Positions 28,952 to 64,000 of a DNA stretch of 64,000 nucleotides are shown in pieces. The DNA is taken from the sequence record NC_042100.1; one strand, 5' to 3'. How positions within the stretch are numbered: position 1 is the stretch's first letter; each line of letters starts with the position of its first letter. The notes beneath the pieces were generated by a model, which was not told the DNA's origin, did no database searches, and was given only the letters and a program-made list of their open reading frames with translations. The position numbers and the translations under genes were made by a program.

Positions 28952-28968
28952 TAAACAATGGCTGATGT

Positions 28969-29000: not shown

Positions 29001-29025
29001 ACACACTTTATTTTTTGTTAAAAAT

Positions 29026-29049: not shown

Positions 29050-29081
29050 TTATGAGACTTAGTTTTCTTAAGGAAGCAACT

Positions 29082-35888: not shown

Positions 35889-35967
35889 CATACAGTTACT
35901 TTCAAGTCTATATAACCTAAGTGAATAACAATGGGTTATTCATCAATCAATTAACCTTTAATAAGGA
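35884..35967 (+). repeat. 84-bp promoter/stem-loop/RBS cassette, copy 2
   Basis: Near-identical to 25580-25663. Confidence 0.85.
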
Positions 35968-35975
35968 GCACCACC

Positions 35976-47826: not shown

Positions 47827-47836
47827 GAAATAATAA

Positions 47837-50800
47837 ATGGCAGGTATTATCAGAGGGAACTTACTCGATGCCGAAGGCAACGAAGTAAACCCGGGTAAAC
47901 CCGTCACATTAAAGGCCGTCCGATCGGACGGCCTACCTGATGTGACTATCACGACCAATGATTCTGGTCATTGGTCCTTAGAAGTGAACGCTGAAGTCGA
48001 CTCTCAGGTCGACTTCACTTTTATTTACAATGGAGTAGATGTAGGTGCGCACGCGGTGCGTTTCATTGAAACAGCTGAAGTAGTAACCTTGCCGTATTCT
48101 AATTTCCGCGTTAAAGTGGGTAACACTGGTGTTATTGCATTTGCGGTAAAAGACGACCAAGGTAACGGAGTTCCGTACGCGGATGTCACCATCCACCGTG
48201 ACGACGAAAACTCTGAACCAGTAGCGACAGTTAAAACTGATGGATTTGGTATAGCAACATACACAACTCCTCGTGAAAACTCTCCAGTTAATGTTAACTA
48301 TTTTGCAAAGGCAGGTGGTAATGTTAACAGCAACTACATGCAGTGGGAAGATGGTGAAGAAGAAGGTCGCTTCGGAATCGGTGACTTTAAATACATTGAG
48401 AAAATCAATGCCATCGGACGCGGTAGTGTTTCTGGGACCATCCTAGATGCAGCAGGTGAACCACTGTGGGTTTCCGATATTGATATCTTCAACAAAGACA
48501 CTTTAGAAAGCGTTACTACGCAAGGAGAGTCAATTAACGTAGATGGGTTCTTACATACGTTCGACCCACTACCGGAAGGCAAACACCACTTAGTCGCATA
48601 CACCGAGGGTCAGTTCATTGAGTTTACGGTGGAATCCGGGACCTTCCCTAATCCGGATATCCATAACGTAACTCTCCCAATGGGAAATGCTAAGTTTTAC
48701 CCGGGCGGAAGTTGGTCTAACATCTACGGTCAAGCTTTAGAATCAGACGGTAGTAAATACACTCCGACAGAATTTAGCACCATTGGAATTGAAGACAAAG
48801 ATGGACAAGTAAGAACGGTTTCGATGTATCCTGATGGTTCTTTCATTTTCTCTATTAAGGGGGAAGTGGGCGAGACCGTAACGGAAATAATCAAAAACAC
48901 CGCTGGTGAGGAAGTTGTCACACACCAAGGTGAGTTCATTGCTGCCTCTGAATTAAAGAGTCTCCCTTATTCTGTTACGACGTTGTACACCAACGGCACC
49001 GGTGACGTGGCCTTTGCGTTGCTTGACGCCGAAGGTAAGGGCATCCCTTACGCCCTGATCGTGACTTGGGATCCGAATGGTTACGGACAAGCGGTGACTG
49101 ATGAATTCGGTATTGTAGAAACTTCGGTCTCTAAAGACGGAACCGCGTCCACGGTGAGAACCGGTGTTGAATTCGGAAACAAGTCCGCAGCCCACGAAGT
49201 GTCTTTCAGTGGGTCTTCAGTGGCGAGTGAATTCCGTAACATGACCTTCCCTAGTGTAGGTGATACCGTAAACGCCATGACCATCAGCGGTCGTATTTAC
49301 GATCAAGGTGGTAATGGATTTAAACCGACTCGTTTAGGGGTATTCGACAAGCACACGTTGGGACACACTCCAGTGGACATGTCGTCGGTTAACGGTGACG
49401 GTACTTTCTCTTTTGACTTTGGTCCATTAGAAAAAGGCAAACATAACCTTGTTCTTGGTACCACGGGAGTTACCTTAGAGAAAACGACAGAATGGGCGAT
49501 CGGTTTCCCTCCGGGTTTACGTACTGAACGTTTAAACTATTCTTCTTACCCGAACATTTACATTGGTGATGAAGGGTTGGTTGCATACCGCGCGAGTTTG
49601 ATTGAAGACGCTAAGTTGATCCCTGTGGTCGGTATTCCAGCAAGTTTGTCTGTTCGTGTAAACGGAGAATGGAAAGAACTGGAAACGAAGTTGACCGACG
49701 ATAACGGGATTGTGGAATATTCGTTACCACCGGAAATCGATGGCGTTCAACTAAGCGGTTATCATGAAGTTCGTTGTGTGATGGGACCGAATACGGAATC
49801 GGGCGGTATTACGTGGGTGAACGATCGTGATGTAATCAGTGAGTTTGGTTACTTCGATTACATTAATCCTGTTAACACTGGCGGGCGTTTATCAATTGAG
49901 TTAGAAGCGTTAAACCAAGATGGAACGAAAGTTGACCTCACCGATTGTGGTGTGGTGGTTCTGAATAGTTTCTTCTACGAATCTTACCTTGCTGAAATCA
50001 CTGAGAACGCTAAGGGGACTTACTCGGTTTCTTTCCCTACCATGCCAGACGGAGACCACGATGTGGTGTTCTACAGCGGGAATGCGCAACGCAAGTTGTC
50101 ATTAACTTGGGGCGGTGCTACAGCTAACGAACCTGCGGGTATTCAACTGGACCCGACCTCACCAACATCAGCCGTTGTTGACACCATAGTAACCGTATCT
50201 GGTTCAATCATTGACAGTGAAGGCAACGTTGTTCGTCCTGTGGAAGAAATGGAACTTTCTATCCGTGACGAAAATGCGACGACAGTTAAAGTTAAAGTGG
50301 GTCCATCAGGATCGTTCTCTTTTGAAGCAACGTCCGATACCATTAAGACTAAGACTTACTCCATCTTAGACGACGGCAATAACCTTTACGTTCACCAAGT
50401 GGAGTTTGTCTCCGCACCAGTGATTGAATTCGCCAATTACACTGGTGACAAGGTTGCGAAGACCCATAACGCCACCTTAGCAGTTGTGGTAAAAGATGCT
50501 GACTCTAATGGCATTGAGGGGATGTTGGTTAACTTCACTAACACTTATGATGCGAGTGTGGATTACGGTAAGGTGGTGACAGACGAGTTTGGTGTAGCTG
50601 AACTTGTTTTGAACTACAACCCAGACACCATCACTGCACCAAGTGTTCCGCAAGATGAAGTAACAGCGTTCATTAATGGCACGGACTTAAAAGACAGTCG
50701 CACCATTCGTTGGGCAACAGACACTGAGAACTCAGCAATTGAAATCGCTGACCTAGTGATCAGTCCTCAAACTTACGTTGGCGAACCTATTCAAGTAACC

Positions 50801-53800
50801 GGTAAGTTAGTTGGCAATTTGAACCAAACTAATACCTCTATCATGTGGTTGGTGGTGTTTAACAAATCCACCCTAGGTGGAAAGATGTTCAACGGCAACA
50901 TTCAACCGGACGGTACATTTGACATCAACATCGGTCCTTATGATCTTGGTGCAAACGAATTAGTGTTTGCGACGAACAGTACTGTAATCCCTAGTACGGT
51001 GTTTGTAACCGAAGCACCTATCGTCCTTAAGGGGATGCGAACGCTCCCTTATTCGACCAGTAAGGTTAAACAATCAGGAAGCGCTACGCTTGCGTTTGCC
51101 GGCATTAACTCCGTAGACAAGCCAATGGTGGGTCAATCAATAGAACTACGCTTAGGAAGCGATACAGGGCTATTGCTGGACACTAAAACTACGGATGAGT
51201 TCGGTATCGTTGAGTTTACCGTGAACGATAATCCGGATACCCCTAATTCTGGTGACCTGACTTACTTTGCCGTGAGTGAAGGCATTACAACGAACGCCAT
51301 TGTTGAATGGGGTGTGACAGACCCGGTAGTTGAAGAGCTGCATGGTTTTGAAGCCACTCGTCATGTGGCGGATGGTGAAGAAGGTGTGATCAAACTCAGT
51401 CCTCTTTCACACATGAGTTACACATCTGGTTCAGTCGCAACGGATCCGGGTGGTAACATCACGCCATGGGAAACGAAATCACATGTTGCTGGTGCGGTGA
51501 TTCGCGTGTTTGATAAGCGAACGCTTCAAGAGATTGCTTTAACGGAAATAGACAGTGACCTTGATGTTTATGGTGAACGTTTCAACTTATACCGCATTCC
51601 TACACAAACCCTAGGCGACCATGAATTGGTGGTCTTTGGTGAAAACGCGGTGATGGAAACCACAATGACTTGGGATGCGGATACCGTGCTGGTTAAACCA
51701 ACACGATTCAACATACTCAATAACAGTGGTAATGCGTTTATCCGGTTCAACCTTGATCAGTGGATTGATGGTACAGCCATCGATGGATCAGGTGATACGG
51801 CAGTGCTTACTGGCTATGTGGAAGCACAAATTTCTGACACACAAAACCACCCAGTTTACATCACACCGAAAGGTCGATTTGTTGCTAAATTGGGAGAAGG
51901 TAAGCCAGCCGGTAAACATCCTTACGACTTTAAAGTTGATGGCGTGGTTGTAGACACTCAGGAGATCAACTACTACGATCAACTTAATGTCACACTACTA
52001 CCTTACAGCACACCTAAGCCAGCTAAAGGAAGAAGTGCGACCGTAGGGGTGATTGTTAAAGACGGTGACGGGAACGTAGTTCCTGATGCGTGCCTAACAT
52101 TTACTCCGGGAGCAAGAAACTCTTTCGAGTATAAAGTCAACGTTAAGAGCGACTTTAACGGCATGGCAGAAGTGACTTGGAATCATGACGAAAGTTTCCC
52201 TGAGTTTACGATGTTGAGTGGCTACAACGGTGGGGTGACAGGAGAGTCGCTGTTAATCCGTTGGGTGGAATCACCTGAGCTAACCGGTGATCGTTTTGAA
52301 ACCTTAGTGGTCCCTGAGAAAGTAGTAGGGGATGACAAAGCGGTAATTACTGGTAAGATCTTAGATCAGGACGGCAATCCTTACTCTAACGGTGAACTAG
52401 CGGTCTACAACAAGACGGAGATGACCAACACTGTACTTACGGGTAACATCCAACCGGACGGTACGTTTAGTGTGGAATTAGGTCCTTATCCATTCAAGAC
52501 CTATGAGTTGATCTTTGCTACACTAGGTAACATCGATCGTCAAACGACACGGTGGGGTGGTAGTGGTATCTTAGCAAGTATCGAAATTGATCCTGATAGT
52601 GGCACTCGCGGGCTATTAGGTGACACCGTTGAGATCTTTGGTAGTTCCACGGACACTATCGGCACACCATTCACACCAGATGAAGGGGTTTACACTCTGG
52701 ATGTTGTGAATGATAAAAACGGTGATGTTCTCCCAACGGTTATCGACGCGCAAGGTAACTGGTCCTTCAATGCGACTCATGAAGTAAGTGAAACGGTCAC
52801 ATACACCTTTAAAGATGGTGAGACAGTCTTAGCGACTCATGCGGTTGAGTTCTTTGAAGGTGCGGGTACTTTACGTAACTTCGATGTCCCTAGCACGGTT
52901 AAGGTGGGTCTGAACGAAGACTTCACATTAACGGGTGAAGTGTACAACACCATGAACAAACTTTACCGACCAATCGTTGACGAATTGTTCACACTGGTGC
53001 TGGATGAGACTACTGAGTTCCAAGGCACGATTCATACTGACGGTACATTCAGCGTGAAGCCGACGAATGATAAAGTGGAAACTCAAAGCTTTACCTTTAA
53101 GGTCGGAGAAGACACTTACGACACAGTAGACGTCAAGTGGTGTCAGACGGTAAGTTTAGCGTTTAACGCAGACTCTCAACCTAAGGCTGTTGTCGGTGAT
53201 GATGCTTATGTATCAATCCGAGTGGTGGATGAGAACGGAGAAAGCGTTACCGGGCGTGTAGTGGAGTTCTATGAAGGTGAAGTCACTGGTGAACCTCTAG
53301 ATACTGAGGATGTCTACAGTGAGACCTACATTGGTTACTGGCCTAAAGAAGCCACTGAAGTGGGTGACGTAGTAATCACTGCTAAGTTGGGTGGTATTCA
53401 AGATACCTTGACATTGTCTTGGGTAGGTAGTGATCCTAAGATCGCGGCTGGATTTGGTCGTAAGACCTCAAGAACGGGTTACGTGGTTGACACTAAACCG
53501 GCTTCCGGTACAACAGCAACACTACGAGGCACAGTTGTAGACCAAGACGGCACGCCGTTAGTAGGTCCACAATTCCTTAAAGTGTTCGATCAGGGGTCGT
53601 TTGACTTAACGGATTACTCTGCACAAGTTCAAGCTGATGGTACGTTCGATATCGAGCTCCCAGTGCAACCAGATGGTACTTACAACTACAGTCTTGTTAC
53701 TGAAGGTAACGTGGGTTCCATCAGAGGGATTTCTTGGGATGTTGAAAACGAAGACCTGAAAACGGTTAAGTTGGATGCGAGCGTTCCTACTCAGGTTAAT

Positions 53801-56800
53801 GTTGCTAGCACGCACACGCTTCAAGGTACTATCTTGGATAGCGCTGGTGACACCGTTGCTCCGTCTAAGAGCACTACGGTTTACGTAAACAGCAGTGAGG
53901 GTAACACCTACGAGTTTACAGTCACTCCGGGTGGAACGTGGTCGTTTGCCTACACCTTTAGTAATGCAGGGGATGTGTTGTTTGACTTCCATACTTACCA
54001 AGGTAAGTACTTGGGGTCGGTTACAATCACGGTTGAAGAAGCGGCACCGGTATTCACTTCTATTGAGTGGGTTGGTGAACAACCTACAGAAGGAATGGTT
54101 GGTGAGTCTGTGAAACTAACGGCGGTTACTTTAGACCAATACGGAAATCCGATCGATAGCGTTTCAGTACGTCCATTCATTAATGGTGTACCACAAAACG
54201 CCTTCCGTTCTCCTCCGGGTGGTTCTTGGAGTCTGGATTACACTTCAACCGAAGCAGGTCCAGTGCTTTATGAATTTGGCTGGGAACCGGACGTTGCTCG
54301 TATTGGACACACTGTTGAGTGGAAGCTTCCAGTGGATTCAATCGAAGTCATGCGCTATTCTGACTCTAATGCTGTACCGGGACAAACCGCGTTTGTACCA
54401 TTTGCTGCTCTAGATAGTTCAGGTAAAGGCATTGCAGGTGTTCCTATTGCCCTGCACTTGGATTCGGCTTCGGGTACGTTGTTAACCACTGTAACCACCA
54501 ACGAGTTTGGCATTGCTGAGTTTAACGTTCCTCAGAAAGGAAGTAACGCTAACCGCTTGATCTACGCTAAATACGGTGACATTGTGAAAGAACGTCGCCA
54601 ATGGTGGGCTAACGATCCACTAACACCGGCAACAGGATTTGCTAACTTAACGGTCACCAATCCAGTGCCTGAAGGTGAACGTGCACTAGTTAGTGTTCAA
54701 GCAGTAGCAAGTGATGGCGGTCTTCGCCCACTGTCTACGGTAGGTATCTTTGATCCAGAAACATTAGATCAAGTCTCATTTAACCGCGTAACTACCGGTG
54801 AGTCTAAATCCCACTTGTTGGACTTCGGACACAGTGGAACAGGAACTAAGACTTACATCTTAACTACTGACGCTGGTCACCAAGAGTTCACGGTAACTTG
54901 GGAAAGTAAACCTGTAGTAACACCAAACGACTTAGTATTCGATGCGGATTCTCCGGAATCATTAGTGGTAGGTGAATGGAATACGTTGAGCGGTAAGTTA
55001 GCAGTAGACGGTGTTCCAGTAACTGAATTGGATCACTACGTTAAAGCGACGATGACCGTGGGTGGACAGGAAAGCTACCTAGACTTGGATGTTAGCAAAG
55101 GGACGTTCCGCGTGCTGGTTAAACCAACAGCGGCTGGAACAGAAAACTACGACTTCAAACTTAATGATGTGAGTGTTGTGGTAAAGTCCTTCCGTCACAG
55201 TAACAACGTGACGTTAAACGACGTGAGTGTGTTATCGGTCACTACCCCTCAAATAGGTGACCCTGTGGTACTAAGTACTGTAGTGAAAGATAGCGAAGGG
55301 AACCCTATCCCTAAACTCCCGGTGACGTTTAAACTAGCCGGCGGGAACACACTCGCTACATTAAACACGGATGTCAAAGGAATGGTAACACATTCAGTGC
55401 CTTACCAATCCGGGACAATGTCTTCTGACTTTGAAATTAAAGTGGGAAGTGTCGTAGAAACAGTAACAGCAACTTGGAAACCAACTAATGAACTTATCGA
55501 CGTGGCGTTTGAAGGACTAAGTACCCCAGCGACGGTTTACGATGGTGAATTAGCGAAAGTAACAGGTAAGTTAATCAACCAACAAAACAATGGGACGTCA
55601 ACAACGAAGTTCGAGATCTACCATCGTGGGTTATTAACTCATACCAGTCATGCCGCCGATGTACAACCAGATGGTACGTTCGACTTTAATATTGGTCCGT
55701 TTGCAGTAGGGGTGAATGAATTCTACTTCATCATCAACGGCAAACGCATTGAACGTAGTATCGAGTACATTGAACGCACTGACCCAGAACTGAGTCGTGT
55801 TGAGTTAGATGAGGGTAATCCTACTTCAGGGTTCTCTGGTGAAAACTTAACCATCAGTGGTAAGGGTTATGATCAATACGGTGATCCAATTGCGAACGCT
55901 CAGGTTCAATGGGCAATTTCTGGTGACACACAACCTGCACTAACCACAGGTCCAGATGGTTCATTCAGCACAACGGTTACGCACAACACCAACGCTAGCA
56001 TCACCTACCGATTCGGTGGTAATGACGGCATACCGGTGGCTAACTTGAGTATTGCGTGGACCGTGGCAACGTCAAACACGATGGCGTTTGTTGGTACATC
56101 ACAATGTAAGCAAACTCAAAACAACGAAGCTAACATTGAGTTGTACGTGAAAGACCAAGACGGTGTTGGGGTTCAGGATGCTCAGATCGTAATTAGAGAT
56201 CAGGGCTCAGAAACCCCTATAGCGACACTGACAACTAACGTGCGTGGTTTGGCGTCTTACGCCATCCCTTACGAAGCAGGTAATGATAACCGTACTATCG
56301 AAGCAACTCTGGAACAACTGACAGAGACGTTAGACATTACGTGGTATCCTGCGGTGACTAAGTATGCGACCGGCTTTACTCGTCTGTATATGGATAACCG
56401 CCCTGCTTCAGGAAAATCAACGACGGTACGTGGTCAGCTAGTTGATCAAGAAGGTAATCCAATCACAACGGCTTCAACGTTGGGTATCTTTAACACGATC
56501 ACCTTGGAGAACCATGATTATATCGATCAACTACAACCGGACGGTACGTTTGAGTTTGAGTATGGTCCTGAGGTTGATAGCAACTACCCTATCTCGCTCT
56601 TCACCGATGCCGGTCATTTCGATGAGACGATCATCTGGGATTTGAATAACGCTGACATGAAACGTGTGGTGTTTGACAACAACATTCCTAGAATGACGAA
56701 GAGTAATGGTAGAGTTAGTCTACACGGTACGTTTGTGGACAGTGACGGGAATCCATTCACTCCGTTATCTAACACCGCGTGTACGGCAACTGGAGATAAT

Positions 56801-58426
56801 GGTGATGCCTTTACAGGTACCATTAAAACGGATGGTACGTTCGAAGTTGAAGTATGGTTCCCTGAGTACCGTACCCACAAAGTCGACATATCCGCGCCTG
56901 ATAAGACTTACCTAGGGACTTACTCTCTGGTAGTAACCGCAGATAACATCATTGATGAAATGCCTTACTCAGCTAACGTTGCAACCACGGGTCAGCCGGC
57001 AACAATGGCAGTGAAAGTCGTAAACCAAAGTGATGTTGCGGTGGAGGGTACTGAAGTCACTGCTCACTTGGGCGATCCAAGTAATCCGGCGGTGGTGACA
57101 GCGAACACGGACGCCAGAGGCATTGCAACCATGAATGTTCCTGCTCCAGCGGAAACAGGCAAAACAACGGTCTACTTTAAGAACAGTACTTCAGTGCTTG
57201 ACGCAGAGGTGGATTGGAAGCCTGTGGACGATCTGGTTGGTAAAACATTCCAAGATGTCGTAACGTCGTCTCCGGCTGAATACGGTCAACCAGCTACAAT
57301 CAGTGGTAAGCTGTTGGATCAGAACGGGGATGTGTTACCGGGTCGTAACCTTGGTGTTTACCACTTGAATGGAGGTACGTTGTTAGACACTACTGTAGTG
57401 AAGAACGATGGAACAGGGTTTACTCTGGAAGTTGGTCCTTTAACTACAGGAACTCATCAGCTAGTGTTGTTCACGGGTAATGCTGAACGTTATGAAGAAA
57501 TTACATGGAACGTGGAAATCCCTCCTATTGGGAAACTAGAAACGGTCTCGTTCTCTTCAACTAAGGCTCCAAGTGGTCAACCTGCTAAAGTTCACTTCTA
57601 CGTCCTTGCACCTAACTACGGTCGCGTCAAAGACGTTCCAGTAACCGCACGTTGGGGTAATGCTCAAGGTGAAGTTATTGCAACAGAAATGACGAACTCT
57701 GAAGGCTTGGTAAGTTACACCTTACCGGGAACGGACGAGTCTGGTGATCGACTAGGTGTGCATACGGTTTACGTTGAAGTTGGTGGTAAGTCCATCACAG
57801 ATACCGTGGAGTGGGTAGACGACGAGTTGATTGGTCAGTCTATCATTGAGATCGACAACATGCAGAACATCGAATACGGGGAGAAATTCCTAGTTCGCAT
57901 GACGGTCAGAGATCAAAATAACGAACCTATCCGTAACCCGGATTACAGTTTGTTCCAGCCTAAGTCTCGTCAAGAGGTTATTAATCTGGTTCGGATCGAC
58001 TACCCGGGCGATGATGTGGTGTTCCAAGCAACCGCACAATCAAGTTCAGTAACGGAGTTGTATGTCGGTACTGACAATGACTATCGTGTTATCCCGGTTA
58101 ACTGGGATTACGCTAACGACATCATTAAACCAGTAACCGCGGCGATCGACGTTGACGTTCCTGAATATCATCCTGTGGGCGTTGACTCAATAGTGAAAGG
58201 TAAAGTACTCGACACCAATGGTTTAGAGTTCCGACCAACTACTATTCTGAAGCTGAAAGCACGTCGTGTTAGCGATAATTCAGAAACTGAGTTGACGGTC
58301 ATGCCAGATGGTGAATGGGCGTTTGTTGTGAACGAACCTACTGAGTCTGAAGTAGTGTACAAGTTAATGTACGGCAACGTAGAATTAATGGAATACACGG
58401 CTAAGTTCGGTGCTCCTGCAAGCTAA
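47837..58426 (+). CDS. Giant Ig-like (invasin/Big_1-type) repeat protein, putative tail fibre/adhesin, 3529 aa
   Basis: About 11 TDEFG-like motifs and recurring LPYS, GxxxDQxG, QPDGTF and terminal Trp motifs; acidic, beta-rich composition. Confidence 0.8.
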   Translation: MAGIIRGNLLDAEGNEVNPGKPVTLKAVRSDGLPDVTITTNDSGHWSLEVNAEVDSQVDFTFIYNGVDVGAHAVRFIETAEVVTLPYSNFRVKVGNTGVIAFAVKDDQGNGVPYADVTIHRDDENSEPVATVKTDGFGIATYTTPRENSPVNVNYFAKAGGNVNSNYMQWEDGEEEGRFGIGDFKYIEKINAIGRGSVSGTILDAAGEPLWVSDIDIFNKDTLESVTTQGESINVDGFLHTFDPLPEGKHHLVAYTEGQFIEFTVESGTFPNPDIHNVTLPMGNAKFYPGGSWSNIYGQALESDGSKYTPTEFSTIGIEDKDGQVRTVSMYPDGSFIFSIKGEVGETVTEIIKNTAGEEVVTHQGEFIAASELKSLPYSVTTLYTNGTGDVAFALLDAEGKGIPYALIVTWDPNGYGQAVTDEFGIVETSVSKDGTASTVRTGVEFGNKSAAHEVSFSGSSVASEFRNMTFPSVGDTVNAMTISGRIYDQGGNGFKPTRLGVFDKHTLGHTPVDMSSVNGDGTFSFDFGPLEKGKHNLVLGTTGVTLEKTTEWAIGFPPGLRTERLNYSSYPNIYIGDEGLVAYRASLIEDAKLIPVVGIPASLSVRVNGEWKELETKLTDDNGIVEYSLPPEIDGVQLSGYHEVRCVMGPNTESGGITWVNDRDVISEFGYFDYINPVNTGGRLSIELEALNQDGTKVDLTDCGVVVLNSFFYESYLAEITENAKGTYSVSFPTMPDGDHDVVFYSGNAQRKLSLTWGGATANEPAGIQLDPTSPTSAVVDTIVTVSGSIIDSEGNVVRPVEEMELSIRDENATTVKVKVGPSGSFSFEATSDTIKTKTYSILDDGNNLYVHQVEFVSAPVIEFANYTGDKVAKTHNATLAVVVKDADSNGIEGMLVNFTNTYDASVDYGKVVTDEFGVAELVLNYNPDTITAPSVPQDEVTAFINGTDLKDSRTIRWATDTENSAIEIADLVISPQTYVGEPIQVTGKLVGNLNQTNTSIMWLVVFNKSTLGGKMFNGNIQPDGTFDINIGPYDLGANELVFATNSTVIPSTVFVTEAPIVLKGMRTLPYSTSKVKQSGSATLAFAGINSVDKPMVGQSIELRLGSDTGLLLDTKTTDEFGIVEFTVNDNPDTPNSGDLTYFAVSEGITTNAIVEWGVTDPVVEELHGFEATRHVADGEEGVIKLSPLSHMSYTSGSVATDPGGNITPWETKSHVAGAVIRVFDKRTLQEIALTEIDSDLDVYGERFNLYRIPTQTLGDHELVVFGENAVMETTMTWDADTVLVKPTRFNILNNSGNAFIRFNLDQWIDGTAIDGSGDTAVLTGYVEAQISDTQNHPVYITPKGRFVAKLGEGKPAGKHPYDFKVDGVVVDTQEINYYDQLNVTLLPYSTPKPAKGRSATVGVIVKDGDGNVVPDACLTFTPGARNSFEYKVNVKSDFNGMAEVTWNHDESFPEFTMLSGYNGGVTGESLLIRWVESPELTGDRFETLVVPEKVVGDDKAVITGKILDQDGNPYSNGELAVYNKTEMTNTVLTGNIQPDGTFSVELGPYPFKTYELIFATLGNIDRQTTRWGGSGILASIEIDPDSGTRGLLGDTVEIFGSSTDTIGTPFTPDEGVYTLDVVNDKNGDVLPTVIDAQGNWSFNATHEVSETVTYTFKDGETVLATHAVEFFEGAGTLRNFDVPSTVKVGLNEDFTLTGEVYNTMNKLYRPIVDELFTLVLDETTEFQGTIHTDGTFSVKPTNDKVETQSFTFKVGEDTYDTVDVKWCQTVSLAFNADSQPKAVVGDDAYVSIRVVDENGESVTGRVVEFYEGEVTGEPLDTEDVYSETYIGYWPKEATEVGDVVITAKLGGIQDTLTLSWVGSDPKIAAGFGRKTSRTGYVVDTKPASGTTATLRGTVVDQDGTPLVGPQFLKVFDQGSFDLTDYSAQVQADGTFDIELPVQPDGTYNYSLVTEGNVGSIRGISWDVENEDLKTVKLDASVPTQVNVASTHTLQGTILDSAGDTVAPSKSTTVYVNSSEGNTYEFTVTPGGTWSFAYTFSNAGDVLFDFHTYQGKYLGSVTITVEEAAPVFTSIEWVGEQPTEGMVGESVKLTAVTLDQYGNPIDSVSVRPFINGVPQNAFRSPPGGSWSLDYTSTEAGPVLYEFGWEPDVARIGHTVEWKLPVDSIEVMRYSDSNAVPGQTAFVPFAALDSSGKGIAGVPIALHLDSASGTLLTTVTTNEFGIAEFNVPQKGSNANRLIYAKYGDIVKERRQWWANDPLTPATGFANLTVTNPVPEGERALVSVQAVASDGGLRPLSTVGIFDPETLDQVSFNRVTTGESKSHLLDFGHSGTGTKTYILTTDAGHQEFTVTWESKPVVTPNDLVFDADSPESLVVGEWNTLSGKLAVDGVPVTELDHYVKATMTVGGQESYLDLDVSKGTFRVLVKPTAAGTENYDFKLNDVSVVVKSFRHSNNVTLNDVSVLSVTTPQIGDPVVLSTVVKDSEGNPIPKLPVTFKLAGGNTLATLNTDVKGMVTHSVPYQSGTMSSDFEIKVGSVVETVTATWKPTNELIDVAFEGLSTPATVYDGELAKVTGKLINQQNNGTSTTKFEIYHRGLLTHTSHAADVQPDGTFDFNIGPFAVGVNEFYFIINGKRIERSIEYIERTDPELSRVELDEGNPTSGFSGENLTISGKGYDQYGDPIANAQVQWAISGDTQPALTTGPDGSFSTTVTHNTNASITYRFGGNDGIPVANLSIAWTVATSNTMAFVGTSQCKQTQNNEANIELYVKDQDGVGVQDAQIVIRDQGSETPIATLTTNVRGLASYAIPYEAGNDNRTIEATLEQLTETLDITWYPAVTKYATGFTRLYMDNRPASGKSTTVRGQLVDQEGNPITTASTLGIFNTITLENHDYIDQLQPDGTFEFEYGPEVDSNYPISLFTDAGHFDETIIWDLNNADMKRVVFDNNIPRMTKSNGRVSLHGTFVDSDGNPFTPLSNTACTATGDNGDAFTGTIKTDGTFEVEVWFPEYRTHKVDISAPDKTYLGTYSLVVTADNIIDEMPYSANVATTGQPATMAVKVVNQSDVAVEGTEVTAHLGDPSNPAVVTANTDARGIATMNVPAPAETGKTTVYFKNSTSVLDAEVDWKPVDDLVGKTFQDVVTSSPAEYGQPATISGKLLDQNGDVLPGRNLGVYHLNGGTLLDTTVVKNDGTGFTLEVGPLTTGTHQLVLFTGNAERYEEITWNVEIPPIGKLETVSFSSTKAPSGQPAKVHFYVLAPNYGRVKDVPVTARWGNAQGEVIATEMTNSEGLVSYTLPGTDESGDRLGVHTVYVEVGGKSITDTVEWVDDELIGQSIIEIDNMQNIEYGEKFLVRMTVRDQNNEPIRNPDYSLFQPKSRQEVINLVRIDYPGDDVVFQATAQSSSVTELYVGTDNDYRVIPVNWDYANDIIKPVTAAIDVDVPEYHPVGVDSIVKGKVLDTNGLEFRPTTILKLKARRVSDNSETELTVMPDGEWAFVVNEPTESEVVYKLMYGNVELMEYTAKFGAPAS

Positions 58427-58435: not shown

Positions 58436-58468
58436 ATAACTCAGGTGGGTTAGACCCACCTGAGTTAT
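58436..58468 (+). terminator. Intrinsic terminator
   Basis: Perfect 15-bp stem ATAACTCAGGTGGGT-TAG-ACCCACCTGAGTTAT followed by CTTTATTTT. Confidence 0.85.
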
Positions 58469-58573
58469 CTTTATTTTCCACTTATTTAAACCCCACTGAG
58501 AATTTATTGAACGAAACGCGTAACTGGGTTCTCCCTTGGCCCGGTATGTATAACAAGCAAAAGGAAGATACTA

Positions 58574-61500
58574 ATGACGGGTGTTATTAGAGGAAACTTG
58601 TTGAAAGGTGACACGACGGTAAAACCTGATGGACCCGTCAGTCTTACCTTGAAACGAGACGATGGACTTCCAGATACGGAAGTCGTAACTGATGCTGATG
58701 GTAACTGGCAAGTCGAGGTTGAGTCGGCAACGAAAAAGAAAGTCAAATTTAGTTTCTTTGACAAAAGCAAGCCACTTGGTGAGCACGAAGTGGAGTTTGT
58801 CAAGGAATTAGAAATCATTCCTGCATCCGGTCGATTCACTAAAGAAAACCTGAATGGCTTCCACGGTCGATTGATTGATCAAGATCTGAATCCAATCTCT
58901 GATGAGGAAATCACTTACAAACGTAAGTACGACGATGCTGAAAACTGGATCGAAAGCAGCGTCACAACAAACGAACATGGTTACTTCAACGTAATGTGGG
59001 GGATCAACGAACTAGAGCCTAAGAAACTTTACGTTCAAATCTCGTACGGGGATTTGAGTGATGAGTTTACTTACGACTTTTCTGATGGTTCTTTGACCAC
59101 TTATTTTGTTGACCCCGTGGGGCAAGAAGAATTGGCTCCGGGTGAGACCTTGAAAGTAGTCGGGCGTGCATTCCCGAATTACGGTTCAGGTGATGTTAAC
59201 CTCACCGAGGACGCGTTCCTTGGTCACTTTGTGGATAACCCACTTTATTTCGTGGATAACAGTGAATCATTAGAGAGTGGCGGTAAGTTCGCTATTGATG
59301 TGGATGGTGCACACGCCACTTTAATGAGCAACAACGGTAACCTAGAAGTAAAACCACCTGTAGTTCAGGGATTGAAACCACCCGCGATTATGCGATTTGG
59401 TGTGCGCAGTGTGCTTGTCAACAACCCAGATCTACATTACAGTGGAAGTTTCCCACTTACTTGTTCGGTGTACACAGCGGATTACAAAAAGCCGAATGTG
59501 GACTCTGGTGAGTTGGAATTCTACGATTTCAATAACTCCCCGCATTCTTACGGCAGTTACCTGACAGAAGGTAATGATCGTTGGTATTCTGGTGAAGACT
59601 TTGTTAGTATTCGGGAAGGTGGGTATAAACACACAGTACTTTGTCGTGGTCGACCACTAGCCGATAATTACGTCCGCTGTTTTACTGACGGTGACATGCT
59701 TAACTTAGTAGGTGGCACTAGAAACTGGGTCCATGTGGGTAACGAAGTCGTAAACCGTCTTGCGTTGACCGACAACCAAGGAAATCCAAGATCGGGGGTA
59801 ACTGTTTCTTTCTTCAAAGGAGATTCGGAAACAGCGTTCCGTCAAGCAACCACAGATGACCTAGGTTTAGTGGAAATCACGCTCCCTGCGGAGAGTGAAG
59901 TGACTCGCACCTTTATGCGTGCAGAAGCAGGTGGTGTTGAAGCAACATGGTACAATGACTGGGTCCCAGCTACACTAGAGGTTGTAGAGAGTGTTTCTAC
60001 ACCTTTCCTTCCGGTTTATTTTGACCGTGATTTCTTCATGTTTTTAACCACTCCTTTGGGTAAAGATGGTCAGCCATTTAACCCTCAGGACAGTGATGTA
60101 TACGAAGGTCTCACGATTCAGTTATTAGACCGTTGGTACGTTCGTCCTTACCTCAGTAAGCGCGATGGGGCTTGTGAATACCTCCTTCCACTACAAGACG
60201 ATGCCAACCCAATTAAAGGCGGTCGGTTATCAATGACTTGTGACCACTTCCACACAGAAAAAGATGTCGTGGTTGGTAAGCGTGTAGGATTAAATCCACT
60301 GCCTTACGCTCAGGGCACAAGTGTTGCCAATCAAGACCTAACCACTGGGTGGTTGTTGTTGGACGACGCTCTGGAGCCAGTAGAAGGCGGAGTGATTGAT
60401 GTCTGGATCGATGATCGAAGTGGAGTAGCGGATCATAAACTGACTACCGACAAATACGGGATTGTAGAAATCACGGTTCCTTTTAAAGAGGGTGAGTTGG
60501 TACGTAAAGCTTACGCTAAACACGGGACAGATCAATTTGAACTAGAATTGATGTGGACTGAGAAAAACGCAGCTTGTCAAATTACAGTTACTCCTCCTCA
60601 AGGTGACATCGGTGTCGATGAACTCGTCACGTTTGATGTACGTTCGTTAGATCAACACGGTAACGAAGTTAATGAAGAATCCCCAGTTCTCTTTAACATG
60701 TATGGTTTCTCTAACCTCGGTGTTTACGACAAAGTCACACACAAAGTCGAATACCTAGGTTCGGACCGTACTACCGATGTAAACGTACAGACTAACGATA
60801 AAGTTGGTGGGCAAGAGCTGGTGTTCTTCACCGAAGCTGGATTTAAAGCAATTGAATTCAATGCTATTCAGCGTCCGGTGCGCAATACTGATCGCCTAGC
60901 ATACAGTTCGAGTACCGCATTCCCTGACTCTGAAGCCTTAGTTGGTTTCCGTGTTTCTGATGAGAATGGACAAGGTGTTCCGGGTGAAACTGTTGAGATT
61001 CGATACCTAGGTAAAGAAGTCGACAAGTTAGTGGGTAACGCTTGGATTAAGGTCCACGAAGGTGGGTCTGATGAAGTCATCGCGACTTTGACTACGGATG
61101 AATTCGGTATTGTTGAATTCCCTACCGCCATGCCAACGGATACCGGAACTCATAGCTGGAGCGGTACAACGGTAAGTGCGGGACCTAAGGACAGAAAGGG
61201 TAAGACGGACGTCTACGTCCATTGGCGTGACGGGATTATCACTGACCTGAAGAATGTGAAGTCGATCCCGGTTACCGAGTCGGGTGAGAAAACGGTGTTC
61301 TCCGCAGAGTTGTGGGAAAACGTCAGTGCTGACAACCAAGTCATCACCGAAGACAACACGCATGTCTATGTTTACATAAAAGAACTGGGCCGTGTTCTAG
61401 AAAACACGAGCACTTTCTATAAGGGTCATAAAGTTTGTTCAATAGATGAGGTCTTACCGGACGGCACATACCACGCAGTACTCTACGTTCAGAACGCGCA

Positions 61501-64000
61501 ACACGAGGTTACTTTATCGTGGGGTTCTGTGGCAGGTGTTAACCCGACTTCATTGACCTACAACAACTTTGTTCCTAAGAAGTTCCCTATTGGTGCAACT
61601 TACATGTCTTCGGTTAGCCTTAACGATGATGACGGTAAGATCACCGCAATGACCAGAGCGGTTAATGTAGAGGTTTACAACTCTGACAACCAAGTCATGG
61701 GTGAAGGTGTAATCGATGTTGATGGCAACGGTCGTATCCGATGGGTTACTACTTACGGTACTCCGAACCCGACCGAAACGTATGAGTTCCGAGACGGTTC
61801 AAAAGTACTGTTCTCTATGACAGTCGGACTTGTCACGTGGCCTAAGATTAAGATGGCTCCTTACAACCTAACCAACCCAGTGATTGGTCAAACGATTACT
61901 GTTGGGGCGTTTGTTGAAAACGAGGAAGAAACTGAAGCAGTAGACGGCATCTATGTGACAATGGAAGACAACTACGGCAACTTGCTTGCTGAAGGGGAAA
62001 CGGATGAATTCGGTTTCTTTGACGTAAGCTACGACCGTATCGGAGAAGAGTCACATATGTTCGTTCGAGCTAGATGTGGACAAAGCTCTAACTATGACAC
62101 CGCTCCTTGGACTGACACTAGCGCACCTCGTTGGGTGGACTTGCAGCTCACGAACCCACCAACTAGCGTGGATAACGATGGAAGTGTCTTCATGAACGGC
62201 ATGATGCGAGATCAGGATGGTAATCCTGCTGATCGTGTTGCTTACAGCGTTTATGATGTTCGTAACCGTAGTACCATCGGTGGTCGTAGTAAATCAGACG
62301 GTCGCATCGAACCTTTCTTGGACAACATTGCATTGGGTAAAAACCCTGTCGTTGTTACCAGTGCCAACGGGATGGTTAGACATGTAGTCACTTACAAAAA
62401 GATGCCAGCTTCCGCTGATATCGTAAGTGGACACAGTGAAGCCTTGGCCTTTGATGGTAATCCTGAAATCACTTATCAGCTGAAGGATAGTGAAGGGAAC
62501 AACTACGTTCCTAACGAAGGCGAAGTGGTTAACTTACTTACTCAAAGCGGGCGTTACCAGAAGCACGGTAATCCGGTAGGTCCTACAGGACTAGTCACCA
62601 TACCTTGGTTCAACAAAGGTGTAGGACATGAGACTTATATCCTTGCTAACGAAGACATGTCTAAGGCTCTCAACACCACGCCTACTGAACACATCGCGAT
62701 TAAGGAAGTTAGGGTGTTCCACGCCAGTGACTACCCTCAGTCCGGTGACCCGGGTATCATGTTGGTAAACGTTCAAGACTTTAACGATAACCCTATCCCT
62801 AATATCGAGTTCCGTGTGAAAAGCACTACCGATGGCTTCGAGTTAGATGCGGTTTACAAAACTGATCCCAACGGTGTTGGTAAGGTGCTGTTAGCCGGTC
62901 AGTCTGACGGAACAAACATCTCGGTCGAATTGACCTGTGGTAATGCAGTTACAAGTTACTCCATTGGTTGGGAGGATGGAGGTGAGTCTAGTCCCGGAAC
63001 GGTAATTTTAGATGCGTTACCTTCAGAAGCTTCTGAAGACGACGATCTTCCAATCACAGGTAAAGTTGTTGATAGTGAAGGGAATGGGATTAGTGGCGCG
63101 TTCGTTTACTTGTACATAGGGACACCGAATAGTACCTATTACCAAGAGGACTCTGTTAACGCGGATGCCGATGGACGTTTCTCTATCTCTCCTTGGTTGG
63201 AATCAGGAAACAACAGGTTCCTTGTGGTTAACGGGGAAGACTTTGATAGTACCGAAGTGTTGTGTTACTCAACACCAATGGTTACTATGACTAACCTCAC
63301 CATTCGTGATATTCACGAAAATCAGCGTGGTCGTATCTCAGCTCTTTATAAAGACAAGTACGGTAATCCGGTTCAAGGTGAAACCGTTGAGTTCCGATTT
63401 GACAGTGCAAGTGGTGAGTTAATAGATACCAAAACCACTAACGAGAAGGGTCATGCGTGGACTGAAGTTACTTGGGCGCAAGCACAAGGACACAGTGAGA
63501 TTTACGCTGTTTGTAATGGGGCGTCGGACTCTAGCTACATTAACGTTGCAGAAGCGGGTGATGTCACTCCAGTGGTTTCTACTATCGCTTGGCACAACAA
63601 TGTTGGGTTCATCCACCCAGAAATGCCAGCATTGATAATGGGTAAAGTGCTAGACCAACACGGTAACCCGTACTCTAAAGCGGAGGTGAACTATTATCGT
63701 CCTGACATCGGATCAAGGAATATGACTTATACTGACTCAGATGGTAACTTTACCTTAGAGGTCAGTCCGGGTCGTTTCGATCCTACCCGTAAGGATTTGT
63801 TTGGTGTACGTGGTAAGTTTACTGAGATCACCCCTAAGTGGAACATGGGAACCAAGTTCAAGTCTGGAACTATTAAATTTAACAAACCTGATTTTCCTGA
63901 AGGTATTCCATACGACTCAACCATCACCTTATCCGGTGCCGTGAAAGATACTGATGGAAGCATGGCTGAAGTGGGTGACTCTGTAATTAAACTGAAGGCG
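58574..64000 (+). CDS. Second giant Ig-like repeat protein (>1809 aa, 3'-truncated by the window), paralogue of 47837-58426; absent from the ORF track because it has no stop
   Basis: AAGGAAG RBS; MTGVIRGNLL matches MAGIIRGNLL; TDEFG-like repeats; the frame was open at every position checked through to 64000. Confidence 0.8.
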   Translation, partial: MTGVIRGNLLKGDTTVKPDGPVSLTLKRDDGLPDTEVVTDADGNWQVEVESATKKKVKFSFFDKSKPLGEHEVEFVKELEIIPASGRFTKENLNGFHGRLIDQDLNPISDEEITYKRKYDDAENWIESSVTTNEHGYFNVMWGINELEPKKLYVQISYGDLSDEFTYDFSDGSLTTYFVDPVGQEELAPGETLKVVGRAFPNYGSGDVNLTEDAFLGHFVDNPLYFVDNSESLESGGKFAIDVDGAHATLMSNNGNLEVKPPVVQGLKPPAIMRFGVRSVLVNNPDLHYSGSFPLTCSVYTADYKKPNVDSGELEFYDFNNSPHSYGSYLTEGNDRWYSGEDFVSIREGGYKHTVLCRGRPLADNYVRCFTDGDMLNLVGGTRNWVHVGNEVVNRLALTDNQGNPRSGVTVSFFKGDSETAFRQATTDDLGLVEITLPAESEVTRTFMRAEAGGVEATWYNDWVPATLEVVESVSTPFLPVYFDRDFFMFLTTPLGKDGQPFNPQDSDVYEGLTIQLLDRWYVRPYLSKRDGACEYLLPLQDDANPIKGGRLSMTCDHFHTEKDVVVGKRVGLNPLPYAQGTSVANQDLTTGWLLLDDALEPVEGGVIDVWIDDRSGVADHKLTTDKYGIVEITVPFKEGELVRKAYAKHGTDQFELELMWTEKNAACQITVTPPQGDIGVDELVTFDVRSLDQHGNEVNEESPVLFNMYGFSNLGVYDKVTHKVEYLGSDRTTDVNVQTNDKVGGQELVFFTEAGFKAIEFNAIQRPVRNTDRLAYSSSTAFPDSEALVGFRVSDENGQGVPGETVEIRYLGKEVDKLVGNAWIKVHEGGSDEVIATLTTDEFGIVEFPTAMPTDTGTHSWSGTTVSAGPKDRKGKTDVYVHWRDGIITDLKNVKSIPVTESGEKTVFSAELWENVSADNQVITEDNTHVYVYIKELGRVLENTSTFYKGHKVCSIDEVLPDGTYHAVLYVQNAQHEVTLSWGSVAGVNPTSLTYNNFVPKKFPIGATYMSSVSLNDDDGKITAMTRAVNVEVYNSDNQVMGEGVIDVDGNGRIRWVTTYGTPNPTETYEFRDGSKVLFSMTVGLVTWPKIKMAPYNLTNPVIGQTITVGAFVENEEETEAVDGIYVTMEDNYGNLLAEGETDEFGFFDVSYDRIGEESHMFVRARCGQSSNYDTAPWTDTSAPRWVDLQLTNPPTSVDNDGSVFMNGMMRDQDGNPADRVAYSVYDVRNRSTIGGRSKSDGRIEPFLDNIALGKNPVVVTSANGMVRHVVTYKKMPASADIVSGHSEALAFDGNPEITYQLKDSEGNNYVPNEGEVVNLLTQSGRYQKHGNPVGPTGLVTIPWFNKGVGHETYILANEDMSKALNTTPTEHIAIKEVRVFHASDYPQSGDPGIMLVNVQDFNDNPIPNIEFRVKSTTDGFELDAVYKTDPNGVGKVLLAGQSDGTNISVELTCGNAVTSYSIGWEDGGESSPGTVILDALPSEASEDDDLPITGKVVDSEGNGISGAFVYLYIGTPNSTYYQEDSVNADADGRFSISPWLESGNNRFLVVNGEDFDSTEVLCYSTPMVTMTNLTIRDIHENQRGRISALYKDKYGNPVQGETVEFRFDSASGELIDTKTTNEKGHAWTEVTWAQAQGHSEIYAVCNGASDSSYINVAEAGDVTPVVSTIAWHNNVGFIHPEMPALIMGKVLDQHGNPYSKAEVNYYRPDIGSRNMTYTDSDGNFTLEVSPGRFDPTRKDLFGVRGKFTEITPKWNMGTKFKSGTIKFNKPDFPEGIPYDSTITLSGAVKDTDGSMAEVGDSVIKLKA

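What the first reader, a model, noticed from the sequence alone, without database searches (positions are those of the whole stretch)
58436..58810. Second giant paralogue starts at the same split point: interchangeable fibres for one docking strand
After a strong terminator, the ORF at 58574 begins MTGVIRGNLL..KPDGPVSLTLKRDDGLPDTEVVTDADGNWQVEV, clearly homologous to MAGIIRGNLL..NPGKPVTLKAVRSDGLPDVTITTNDSGHWSLEV, and lacks the same first strand. The 3529-aa protein ends with an apparently complete domain and offers no donor strand. Both giants may therefore compete for the single donor tail of the baseplate protein, giving virions with alternative adhesins whose ratio is set by separate transcription (inference). 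The duplicated register also argues against a sequencing artefact.
Basis: partly seen in the sequence, partly recalled or inferred. Interest (0 to 1): 0.75.

Follow-up and report, generated by a model that had tools for sequence, protein, structure and literature searches.

The report
Giant phage fibres share docking module
In the Vibrio jumbo phage Aphrodite1, the second giant fibre gene starts with the same ~80-residue N-terminal beta-sandwich as its neighbour; that module begins just after the two strands which the preceding baseplate-arm protein carries as an orphan tail, so these fibres probably plug into the same kind of site by a pilus-like strand-sharing trick that has not been shown experimentally.

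Summary
The window is Vibrio phage Aphrodite1 (MG720308.1, nt 1-64000), a nucleus-forming phiKZ-like jumbo phage. gp166 (58574 onward, 2548 aa) and gp167 (47837-58426, 3529 aa) share an N-terminal module (39% identity over 83 aa, E 2e-14). A hairpin terminator (58436-58468, -28 kcal/mol) separates the two genes.

The module is restricted to this clade. It occurs once per fibre, always at residue 1. Aphroditeviruses have 2 copies and Tidunaviruses have 4-5 consecutive fibre genes.

Measured against a profile of its closest complete internal domains, the module starts at profile position 31, so it lacks strands A and A'. gp168 is a homologue of phiKZ gp26, a protein of the fibre-attachment platform, extended by an Ig-like arm. 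It ends with a conserved 24-residue orphan tail predicted to form exactly those two strands.

Relatives add a second start position (39-43). It occurs only in genomes whose tails run longer.

So a shared docking module is well supported, and strand complementation is plausible (about 0.45) but untested. The "single donor tail" part of the reading is doubtful: phiKZ carries 30 gp26 copies per virion, and some relatives have several donor-like segments. Competition between fibres and a transcription-set ratio remain inference.

Novelty: new variant of a known kind. Interest: 0.6.

The parts
40485..43067 (+). gp169, homologue of phiKZ gp27 (core scaffold of the outer peripheral baseplate)
   Evidence: PDB sequence search: PHIKZ027 in 9xqd at E 4.5e-41, and a 'virion structural protein' in 11pb at E 8e-70. 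phrog_3184. Role taken from PMC13250141.
43060..47826 (+). gp168 (1588 aa): an N-terminal phiKZ-gp26-like domain (aa 46-560) followed by about 1000 aa of Ig-like/CarboxypepD_reg-like domains. Proposed baseplate arm that carries the docking tail.
   Evidence: PHIKZ026 in 9xqd, E 1.8e-46. phrog_3430 and phrog_27497, 'virion structural protein'. Weak Big_1 and CarboxypepD_reg Pfam hits. The start at 43060 agrees with all orthologues.
47752..47823 (+). Orphan C-terminal tail of gp168: 24 residues after the last domain's closing Trp. Predicted as two short strands (A and A') of a domain whose remainder is absent from gp168. Proposed donor.
   Evidence: Maps to positions 2-28 of the internal-domain profile in orthologues. 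0 of 1000 shuffles reach its score. Best of 753 ORF ends in the genome. AF2 predicts strands at the same offsets from the Trp as A and A' of the preceding complete domain. The last 17 aa are 94/88/59% identical in orthologues whose preceding 240 aa are 70/69/34% identical.
47827..47836 (+). 10-nt spacer with an AGGA-type ribosome-binding site. gp167 is probably translationally coupled to gp168.
   Evidence: Sequence read. The same 10-nt gap occurs in 2 TSL-2019, phiKT1019, a Logan contig and the ENA contig L018. gp167 is in a different frame, with a stop codon directly before its ATG, so no read-through fusion product is possible.
47837..58426 (+). gp167, first giant fibre (3529 aa). N-terminal module at 47837-48091, then an array of Big_1 / MG / CarboxypepD_reg-like domains. 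Ends in a complete domain.
58436..58479 (+). Intrinsic terminator: hairpin 58436-58468 plus T-run 58469-58479.
   Evidence: -28 kcal/mol, z -6.9; two pairs changed on both sides, pairing kept.
58543..58567 (+). Conserved GTATG box (58543-58550) and ribosome-binding site AAGGAAG (58561-58567) upstream of gp166. Candidate late promoter and start signals.
   Evidence: Invariant in three Aphroditevirus intergenic regions that otherwise differ. Similar boxes lie upstream of gp170 and the terminase gene. The motif is not enriched in intergenic DNA genome-wide, so promoter status is unproven.
58574..58828 (+). N-terminal module of gp166 (aa 1-85): a six-stranded beta-sandwich that starts at strand B. 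Proposed acceptor/anchor.
58574..64000 (+). gp166, second giant fibre (2548 aa; continues to 66220 of the record, beyond the window). An array of Ig-like domains.
   Evidence: Pfam: Big_1 123.7 bits, CarboxypepD_reg 71.5, bMG3 64.2, MG4 60.7. Annotation.

Best explanation
gp166 is a second accessory fibre (adhesin) of the virion. It is a long string of Ig-like domains. Its first ~80 residues form a clade-specific docking module shared with gp167, and with 4-5 fibres in Tidunaviruses.

The module is a diverged copy of one of the fibres' own repeat domains, and it begins at strand B. The missing strands A and A' are encoded as an orphan tail at the C-terminus of gp168. gp168 is a homologue of phiKZ gp26 from the fibre-attachment platform, extended here by a ~1000-aa Ig-like arm.

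The most likely mechanism is that the gp168 tail inserts into the module of either fibre and completes its beta-sandwich in trans. Each gp168 copy would then carry one fibre, and a virion would display a mixture.

gp167 is made next to gp168 (10-nt gap), while gp166 sits behind a terminator with its own start signals. Their amounts can therefore differ.

**Shown:** the homology, the start position, the orphan tail, the conservation pattern and the terminator.
**Inferred:** virion location, physical complementation, the mixture of fibres and separate regulation.

My probability that the module is a shared virion-docking element is about 0.7. My probability that docking is by strand complementation with the gp168 tail is about 0.45.
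For: - **Module at residue 1 of every fibre.** It occurs once per fibre at 73-116 bits; internal domains score at most 31 bits. It is restricted to this clade among 1.84e9 representatives.
- **Same start position.** On the internal-domain profile, all Aphroditevirus fibres place residue 1 at position 31.
- **Spacing fits.** The distance from the closing Trp to the Asp of strand B is 34-35 residues in four complete domains. The gp168 tail has 24 residues after the Trp, and gp167 has 10 residues before that Asp, which gives 35 by the same count (counts).
- **Strand count.** AF2 gives six strands for the module, with core pLDDT 82-91 and the first strand only about 57. It gives eight strands for gp168's last complete domain. 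The tail repeats the A and A' strands at the same offsets.
- **The tail looks like a domain start.** 0 of 1000 shuffles reach its score, and it ranks 1 of 753 ORF ends in the genome. Only gp168-type proteins, VP4B/pTD1 fibre 1 and L018 fibre 1 end in such a segment; other fibres end in complete domains.
- **Both partners are better conserved than their surroundings**.
- **Start positions and tail lengths vary together.** Short-start modules (39-43) occur only in genomes whose tails extend through strand B.
- **gp168 and gp169 are homologues of phiKZ gp26 and gp27**, which build the fibre-attachment platform. gp26 C-termini plug into partner proteins there.
- **A third lineage (L018) keeps the same tail, 10-nt gap and module**.
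Against: - No experiment or solved structure exists for these proteins. No virion proteomics were found for this clade.
- The tail-to-profile matches are weak (4-8 bits). A differently built truncated profile did not detect the tail at all.
- Against Pfam CarboxypepD_reg the module starts at profile position 2, so it could be a complete domain of that type.
- The AF2 model of the gp168 end has low confidence (mean pLDDT 51, five sequences). No coordinates or multi-chain predictions were available.
- In Tidunaviruses the long-start fibres coexist with tails that already contain strand B. Acceptors outnumber donor segments in Aphroditeviruses (1 donor, 2 acceptors) and in phiKT1028 (2-3 donors, 5 acceptors).
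- In L018 the second fibre lacks the module altogether.
- Tandem orphan segments could instead form a small fold of their own.
Confidence: 0.45

Rival explanations
1. The module is an autonomous N-terminal anchor domain. It folds completely on its own and binds the baseplate through an ordinary surface interface, to gp168's Ig arm, gp169 or another platform protein. This is how shared N-terminal domains of other multi-fibre phages work. The gp168 tail would have another role, for example plugging into a platform partner as phiKZ gp26 C-termini do.
For: - The module core is predicted confidently without any extra strand.
- The CarboxypepD_reg model starts at the module's residue 5.
- Paralogues tolerate loss of even the first strand.
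- In phiKZ, gp26 C-termini insert into gp157, gp130/gp139 or another gp26, not into fibres.
- In Tidunaviruses the first fibre is a separate transcription unit.
Against: - It does not explain why gp168 ends with an orphan domain start at exactly the complementary position.
- It does not explain why that tail is more conserved than the adjacent domain.
- It does not explain why short-start modules occur only with long tails.
- It does not explain the conserved 10-nt coupling in three lineages.
Confidence: 0.3
2. The arrangement is a relic of gene fission and tandem duplication. One enormous Ig-array gene was cut into consecutive ORFs and then duplicated. The shared N-terminus reflects common descent of the cut point. 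The orphan tails are leftover half-domains with no docking function, and the fibres attach, if at all, by other means.
For: - The module is a diverged copy of internal repeat domains.
- ORF boundaries inside domains recur at several junctions, including L018 fibre 1 to fibre 2, where the next ORF has no module.
- phiKT1028 fibre 1 lacks the tail that its VP4B and pTD1 orthologues carry.
Against: - Neutral leftovers should decay. Instead, the module and the tail are the best conserved parts of their proteins across three lineages.
- The module keeps an invariant set of residues across 19 paralogues.
- Each fibre has the module exactly once, at residue 1.
Confidence: 0.12
3. gp166 is not a baseplate fibre. 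It could decorate another part of the virion (head, collar, sheath), or it could be made in the cell and not packaged. In that case the shared N-terminus would target something other than gp168.
For: - There are no proteomic data.
- Ig-like arrays also decorate phage capsids.
- The genome has separately annotated tail-fibre and minor-tail genes at 182508-192800 of the record, and another Big_1 array protein without the module at 211108-215631.
Against: - The gene sits in a conserved block: sheath, tube, gp170, gp169 (gp27-like), gp168 (gp26-like), fibres, terminase.
- Its paralogue gp167 is translationally coupled to gp168.
- The fast-evolving distal part with a conserved N-terminus is the usual signature of receptor-binding proteins.
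Confidence: 0.08

Closest known systems
phiKZ fibre paralogues gp131/gp133/gp134/gp135 on the gp26/gp27 outer baseplate platform (PMC13250141; PDB 9xqd)
   Same: - Same virus family.
- Several paralogous fibre proteins share a similar N-terminal segment that anchors them to the outer peripheral baseplate, while their distal parts differ.
- gp168 and gp169 are sequence homologues of the platform proteins gp26 and gp27.
   Different: - The N-terminal module here has no detectable sequence relative among solved structures. The best match is a filamin-type Ig repeat at E 0.002.
- It is a beta-sandwich, not a helical-bundle-forming segment.
- phiKZ gp26 is 552 aa and has no Ig arm or orphan tail.
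- The giants are probably monomeric domain strings, not trimeric or hexameric fibres (inference).
Donor-strand complementation/exchange in chaperone-usher pili and strand exchange in type V pili (from my own knowledge of those systems)
   Same: An Ig-like subunit lacks an edge strand and is completed in trans by a strand from the neighbouring subunit. In type V pili the missing strand is N-terminal and the donor is the C-terminus of the next subunit, the same polarity as proposed here.
   Different: - There is no chaperone, usher or processing protease.
- Two strands (A and A', plus B in some relatives) would be donated rather than one.
- The donor is a baseplate protein of a virus.
- Nothing has been shown physically.
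- No sequence homology to pilins was found.
Goslar DUF7941 tail-associated filaments (PMC13742148)
   Same: These are chimallivirus proteins of the peripheral baseplate. [quoted passage not shown] Several paralogues carry different distal domains.
   Different: - It is a different domain family: no DUF7941 hit appeared in the Pfam scans of gp166, gp167 or gp168.
- DUF7941 proteins are homo/hetero-polymers present in thousands of copies, not giant single chains.
Invasin/intimin and bacterial alpha-2-macroglobulin type Ig arrays (Pfam Big_1, Invasin_D3, bMG3, MG4)
   Same: The domain fold and tandem-array architecture match. Foldseek's best PDB matches are complement C3 MG domains, intimin D0-D1, InvE and alpha-2-macroglobulin. 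Pfam thresholds are passed.
   Different: No outer-membrane beta-barrel and no C-terminal lectin-like receptor domain were detected. The GenBank label 'putative invasin' reflects only the Ig repeats.

Membership tests
Big_1 / CarboxypepD_reg Ig-like repeat proteins (Pfam PF02369, PF13620) | Whole-protein score above Pfam's gathering threshold | tested here: met
   gp166: Big_1 123.7 bits (cut-off 34.9) and CarboxypepD_reg 71.5 (cut-off 32.3). gp167: Big_1 106.3 and CarboxypepD_reg 47.7.
Invasin/intimin (inverse autotransporter adhesins), as the GenBank annotation suggests | N-terminal outer-membrane beta-barrel anchor | tested here: not met
   No such Pfam family appears among hits at E<=0.01 for gp166 or gp167. 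The N-terminus is the 80-aa sandwich module.
Invasin/intimin (inverse autotransporter adhesins) | C-terminal lectin-like receptor-binding domain | tested here: not met
   There is no Pfam hit of that kind. gp166 and gp167 both end in Ig-like domains.
Phage fibre sets with a shared N-terminal anchor domain | Paralogous fibre genes with homologous N-termini and divergent remainders | tested here: met
   Between the two giants the module is 38% identical, while the rest shows only repeat-level similarity of about 24%. Between orthologues the module is 81-86% identical and the rest 30-65%. There are 2-5 copies per genome.
Phage fibre sets with a shared N-terminal anchor domain | The N-terminal domain physically attaches the fibre to the baseplate or an adaptor | not testable with these tools
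   No structure or proteome exists for this clade. There is only genomic context next to the gp26/gp27 homologues.
Phage fibre sets with a shared N-terminal anchor domain | Homology to the phiKZ gp131-type N-terminal segment | tested here: not met
   A profile of 12 modules against all PDB sequences, which include the phiKZ virion entry 9xqd, returned no phiKZ chain. The best hits were filamin-type Ig repeats at E 0.002.
Donor-strand complementation systems (chaperone-usher and type V pili) | Acceptor subunit whose Ig-like fold lacks an edge strand | tested here: inconclusive
   The module starts at position 31 of a 117-position profile of its nearest complete domains. It has six predicted strands against eight. 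Against CarboxypepD_reg, however, it starts at profile position 2. No coordinates were available to check for an open groove.
Donor-strand complementation systems | Partner protein carrying an orphan strand of matching position | tested here: met
   The gp168 tail (47752-47823) maps to profile positions 2-28. 0 of 1000 shuffles reach its score, and it ranks 1 of 753 ORF ends. It is conserved across three lineages. The scores are weak (4-8 bits).
Donor-strand complementation systems | Physical insertion of the donor strand into the acceptor | not testable with these tools
   Only single-chain prediction was available.
Donor-strand complementation systems | Dedicated chaperone/usher or processing protease | not tested
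   No such gene is evident among annotated neighbours, but I made no targeted search.

The most novel reading that the evidence does not exclude
The fibres and baseplate arm of this phage group use a split Ig-like domain as a plug-and-socket system. Orphan A-A' (or A-A'-B) strand segments act as plugs. They sit at the C-terminus of the gp26-like arm and, in some relatives, at the C-terminus of a fibre. The truncated N-terminal modules of the fibres are the sockets, and they come in two matching start positions. Such a system would allow mixed and even branched fibre sets to be assembled from independently transcribed gene cassettes. It would be a viral counterpart of pilus donor-strand exchange.
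Probability: 0.35. Interest if true: 0.8.

Novelty: new variant of a known kind. Interest (0 to 1): 0.6.

Why it matters
How jumbo phages of the phiKZ type attach their outermost fibres is still unresolved. The published phiKZ and Goslar structures both leave the peripheral baseplate and fibres largely unmodelled.

This region gives a concrete hypothesis that structures can test. A gp26-like arm ends in two orphan strands, and every accessory fibre begins exactly where those strands stop. If this is confirmed, three things follow:
- It would be the first fibre attachment by completion of a split Ig domain in trans, as far as my searches found.
- It would explain how these phages carry two to five very different adhesins on one platform.
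- It would provide a sequence rule (the start position of the N-terminus and the end position of the tail) for predicting which proteins connect.

If it is not confirmed, the finding is still useful. It defines a clade-specific N-terminal anchor module and corrects the 'invasin', 'TonB' and 'helicase' labels in the database records.

Tried and rejected
1. **Pfam on the first 110 aa.** It gave only weak, contradictory placements: Big_1 profile positions 24-93 and CarboxypepD_reg positions 2-47. It could not settle whether the domain is complete.
2. **Truncated 'domain-start' profile.** This 40-position profile was over-fitted and did not score the gp168 tail. The entropy-weighted full profile did. 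I report both.
3. **My impression that the extra Tidunavirus tail copies the first strands of the module.** The module profile did not confirm it. The internal-domain profile instead places that tail at positions 16-39.
4. **Searches for more relatives.** The module alignment had no stretch conserved enough to search with. IMG/VR returned only the known isolates. The metagenome collection returned nothing. Two further relatives came from the protein collection.
5. **Promoter test.** TCGTATAG occurs once in the window, at chance level. TCG(G)TAT(G/AG) is not enriched in intergenic DNA. Only local conservation of the GTATG box remains.
6. **AF2 of the gp168 end.** Confidence was low.
7. **Other annotated tail-fibre genes.** The gene at 182508-184649 and the adjacent minor-tail gene at 184770-188039 of the record have no relatives among solved structures; these two and the next minor-tail gene (188078-190288) have no Pfam hits. 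Whether they are gp131-like stays open.
8. **Literature.** I found no virion proteome, receptor or fibre study for this clade.
9. **Rejected readings.**
   - A sequencing artefact is rejected because the same boundaries occur in independent isolates.
   - A read-through or frameshift fusion of gp168 and gp167 is rejected because they lie in different frames with a stop directly before the ATG.
   - gp165 as a third fibre is rejected because it is the large terminase.

- One search printed hmmsearch alignment blocks that include the profile's own consensus line. I used only coordinates and scores.
- In my reasoning I once laid the gp168 tail and the gp167 N-terminus end to end to count spacing.
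- Neither of the last two was sent to a tool or saved, and only the count is used.
Full report
**Identity of the window.** Megablast shows the window is Vibrio phage Aphrodite1 (MG720308.1) nt 1-64000, with identical coordinates. The phage is 237.7 kb and belongs to Gorgonvirinae, genus Aphroditevirus. It is a phiKZ-like, nucleus-forming jumbo phage.

The gene order around the finding is as follows:
- tail tube and sheath on the minus strand
- gp170
- gp169 (40485-43067)
- gp168 (43060-47826)
- gp167 (47837-58426, 3529 aa)
- gp166 (58574-66220, 2548 aa)
- large terminase (66309-69524)

No gene here is broken. All boundaries discussed are natural gene ends shared by independent isolates.

**The observation.**
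- The quoted N-terminus is correct.
- It aligns with the N-terminus of gp167 at 39% identity over 83 aa, E 2e-14.
- The hairpin at 58436-58468 plus a T-run is a strong intrinsic terminator: -28 kcal/mol, z = -6.9, with two stem pairs changed on both sides among three genomes so that pairing is kept.
- gp167 ends in a complete domain.

**What the shared N-terminus is.**
- Six further genomes were fetched.
- The module is present twice in Aphroditeviruses (Aphrodite1, 2 TSL-2019, phiKT1019).
- It is present four or five times in Tidunaviruses (VP4B and pTD1 have four, phiKT1028 has five). It always sits at residue 1 of consecutive fibre genes that lie between the gp168 homologue and the terminase gene.
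- A profile of 19 such N-termini scores 73-116 bits once per fibre, and at most 31 bits on internal domains.
- A scan of 1.84 billion representative proteins found the module at residue 1 only in 13 proteins; those I could trace belong to this phage group.
- The module is much better conserved than the rest of the fibres: 81-86% against 30-65% identity between orthologues, and 64% against 28% to a third lineage.
- AlphaFold2 on residues 1-200 of gp166 (15-row alignment, mean pLDDT 74) gives a six-stranded sandwich for residues 2-75. The core is confident (82-91) and the first strand is poorly defined (about 57). A second sandwich follows.
- Foldseek finds only generic tandem Ig/MG folds and the clade's own proteins.
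- A profile search of solved structures gives nothing better than filamin-type repeats at E 0.002.

**Is a strand missing?** The module's closest relatives are particular internal domains of the same giants and of gp168.
- I built a profile from 17 of these domains with their 34 upstream residues, giving 117 positions.
- On that profile, every Aphroditevirus fibre places residue 1 at position 31, which is the start of strand B.
- Several Tidunavirus paralogues start at position 39-43, so they lack strand B as well.
- In complete domains, the 25-33 residues between the previous domain's closing Trp and strand B form two short strands, A and A'. In the AF2 model of the gp168 end these are residues 103-108 and 112-114 of the modelled fragment (low confidence).
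- The caveat is that Pfam's CarboxypepD_reg model begins at the module's residue 5. A fold that is complete without A and A' cannot be excluded.

**The candidate donor.** gp168 continues for 24 residues (47752-47823) after the closing Trp of its last complete domain.
- This tail maps to profile positions 2-28.
- No shuffle out of 1000 reaches its score.
- It is the best such match among 753 ORF ends of the whole genome, though at only 4.2 bits.
- It is predicted to form two strands at the same offsets from the Trp as A and A' of the preceding domain.
- Its last 17 residues are more conserved than the 240 residues before it: 94/88/59% against 70/69/34%.
- Counting residues, the 24 after the Trp and the 10 that gp167 has before the strand-B Asp put that Asp 35 residues after the Trp, which reproduces the 34-35 spacing of complete domains.
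- gp167 follows after 10 nt in another frame, with a stop directly before its ATG. It is therefore a separate, probably translationally coupled product. This arrangement is kept in three lineages.

**Relatives refine the picture.**
- Tidunavirus gp168 homologues are about 900 aa longer. They carry the homologous tail segment followed by a second orphan segment that runs through strand B, to position about 40. A terminator separates them from the first fibre.
- The first fibres of VP4B and pTD1 also end with two tandem orphan segments. The phiKT1028 orthologue ends at a complete domain.
- Modules that start at position 39-43 occur only in genomes that have these longer tails.
- In the metagenomic contig L018, the first fibre has an orphan tail. 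It is followed after 16 nt by a fibre with no module that starts at position about 20.
- Boundaries that cut an Ig-like domain between A/A' and B are thus a recurring feature of the cluster. Some are coupled and some are separate transcription units.

**Where this sits in the virion.**
- gp168 residues 46-560 are homologous to phiKZ gp26 (E 1.8e-46), and gp169 is homologous to phiKZ gp27 (E 4.5e-41). Both phiKZ proteins are in the solved phiKZ structure 9xqd.
- In phiKZ these proteins build the outer peripheral baseplate, the 'fiber attachment platform'. There are five gp26 and two gp27 per star lobe and six lobes per virion. gp26 C-termini plug into partner proteins (PMC13250141).
- phiKZ's own fibres are paralogues with similar N-terminal segments, which is the same design principle.
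- In Goslar, peripheral DUF7941 proteins are predicted to join by an intermolecular beta-sheet (PMC13742148).
- By analogy, gp168 is a platform protein with a long Ig arm and is probably present in many copies. The 'single' tail is therefore one gene but not one site.

**Expression.**
- gp166 is preceded by the terminator, a GTATG box (58543-58550) and a ribosome-binding site. These are invariant in three otherwise diverged intergenic regions.
- Similar boxes precede gp170 and the terminase gene. The motif is too short to be validated genome-wide.
- Separate regulation of gp166 is plausible but not shown.

**Verdict.**
- The idea of interchangeable fibres using one docking element is well supported in its general form: a shared, conserved N-terminal anchor module.
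- It is plausible in its specific form, strand complementation by the gp168 tail, at about 0.45.
- The claims of a single site, of competition and of a transcription-set ratio are not supported as stated.
- The main rivals are an autonomous anchor domain with a conventional interface (0.3), a fission or duplication relic (0.12) and a non-baseplate role (0.08).
- I found no report of a donor-strand mechanism for phage fibres.

- Only single-chain predictions were possible and no coordinates were available.
- One search printed hmmsearch blocks that contain the profile's consensus line, and I used only coordinates and scores.
- Neither went to a tool or file.

Noticed in passing
Record MG720308.1 66309-69524 (L001:46310-49525), just beyond the window: gp165, annotated 'hypothetical' here and 'ATP-dependent DNA helicase' in relatives, is the large terminase subunit (phrog_2, E 9.5e-54). 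It is 1068-1071 aa in Aphroditeviruses and phiKT1028 but 777 aa in VP4B and pTD1, so there is an insertion of about 300 aa of unknown nature.
   Followed up: partly
window 24963-25075, 25523-25670, 28952-29081, 35889-35975: A recurring intergenic motif of the form TCTATATAAC followed a few bases later by GTG precedes several small genes. It differs from the GTATG-type boxes upstream of structural genes and may mark a second promoter class.
   Followed up: no
L003 (VP4B) 20001-25160 and L004 (pTD1) 14689-19869: The first fibre of VP4B and pTD1 ends with two tandem orphan domain-start segments after its last complete domain. The phiKT1028 orthologue (L002 14940-19850) ends exactly at the complete domain. 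If the segments are plugs, these two phages could have branched fibres.
   Followed up: partly
L018 (ENA ERZ23499629 scaffold_27, 244 kb) 3251-23490: This metagenome-assembled third lineage has a gp168-like protein, a 10-nt gap, then a 3712-aa fibre carrying the module. That fibre ends in a 24-aa orphan tail. After 16 nt comes a 1444-aa fibre without the module, which starts inside a domain.
   Followed up: partly
Record MG720308.1 211108-215631 (L015:41109-45632): Another large Big_1 array protein (1507 aa, Big_1 66.9 bits) lies far from the fibre cluster. It has no N-terminal module, and its location in the virion is unknown.
   Followed up: no
window 43006-43067: The longest ORF for gp168 starts at 43006, but all orthologues align from the ATG at 43060. 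That start overlaps the end of gp169 by 8 nt, so 43060 is the likely start.
   Followed up: yes
L002-L006 and window, every intergenic region after a fibre gene: Nearly every fibre gene in all genomes is followed by its own GC-rich hairpin and T-run. This gives the cluster a cassette-like layout that could ease gain and loss of fibre genes.
   Followed up: partly
window 47837-48091 and 58574-58828: The best solved-structure matches of the module profile are filamin-type Ig repeats (E 0.002-0.004). Filamin repeats are known to bind partners by strand addition. The match is marginal and may be only generic.
   Followed up: no
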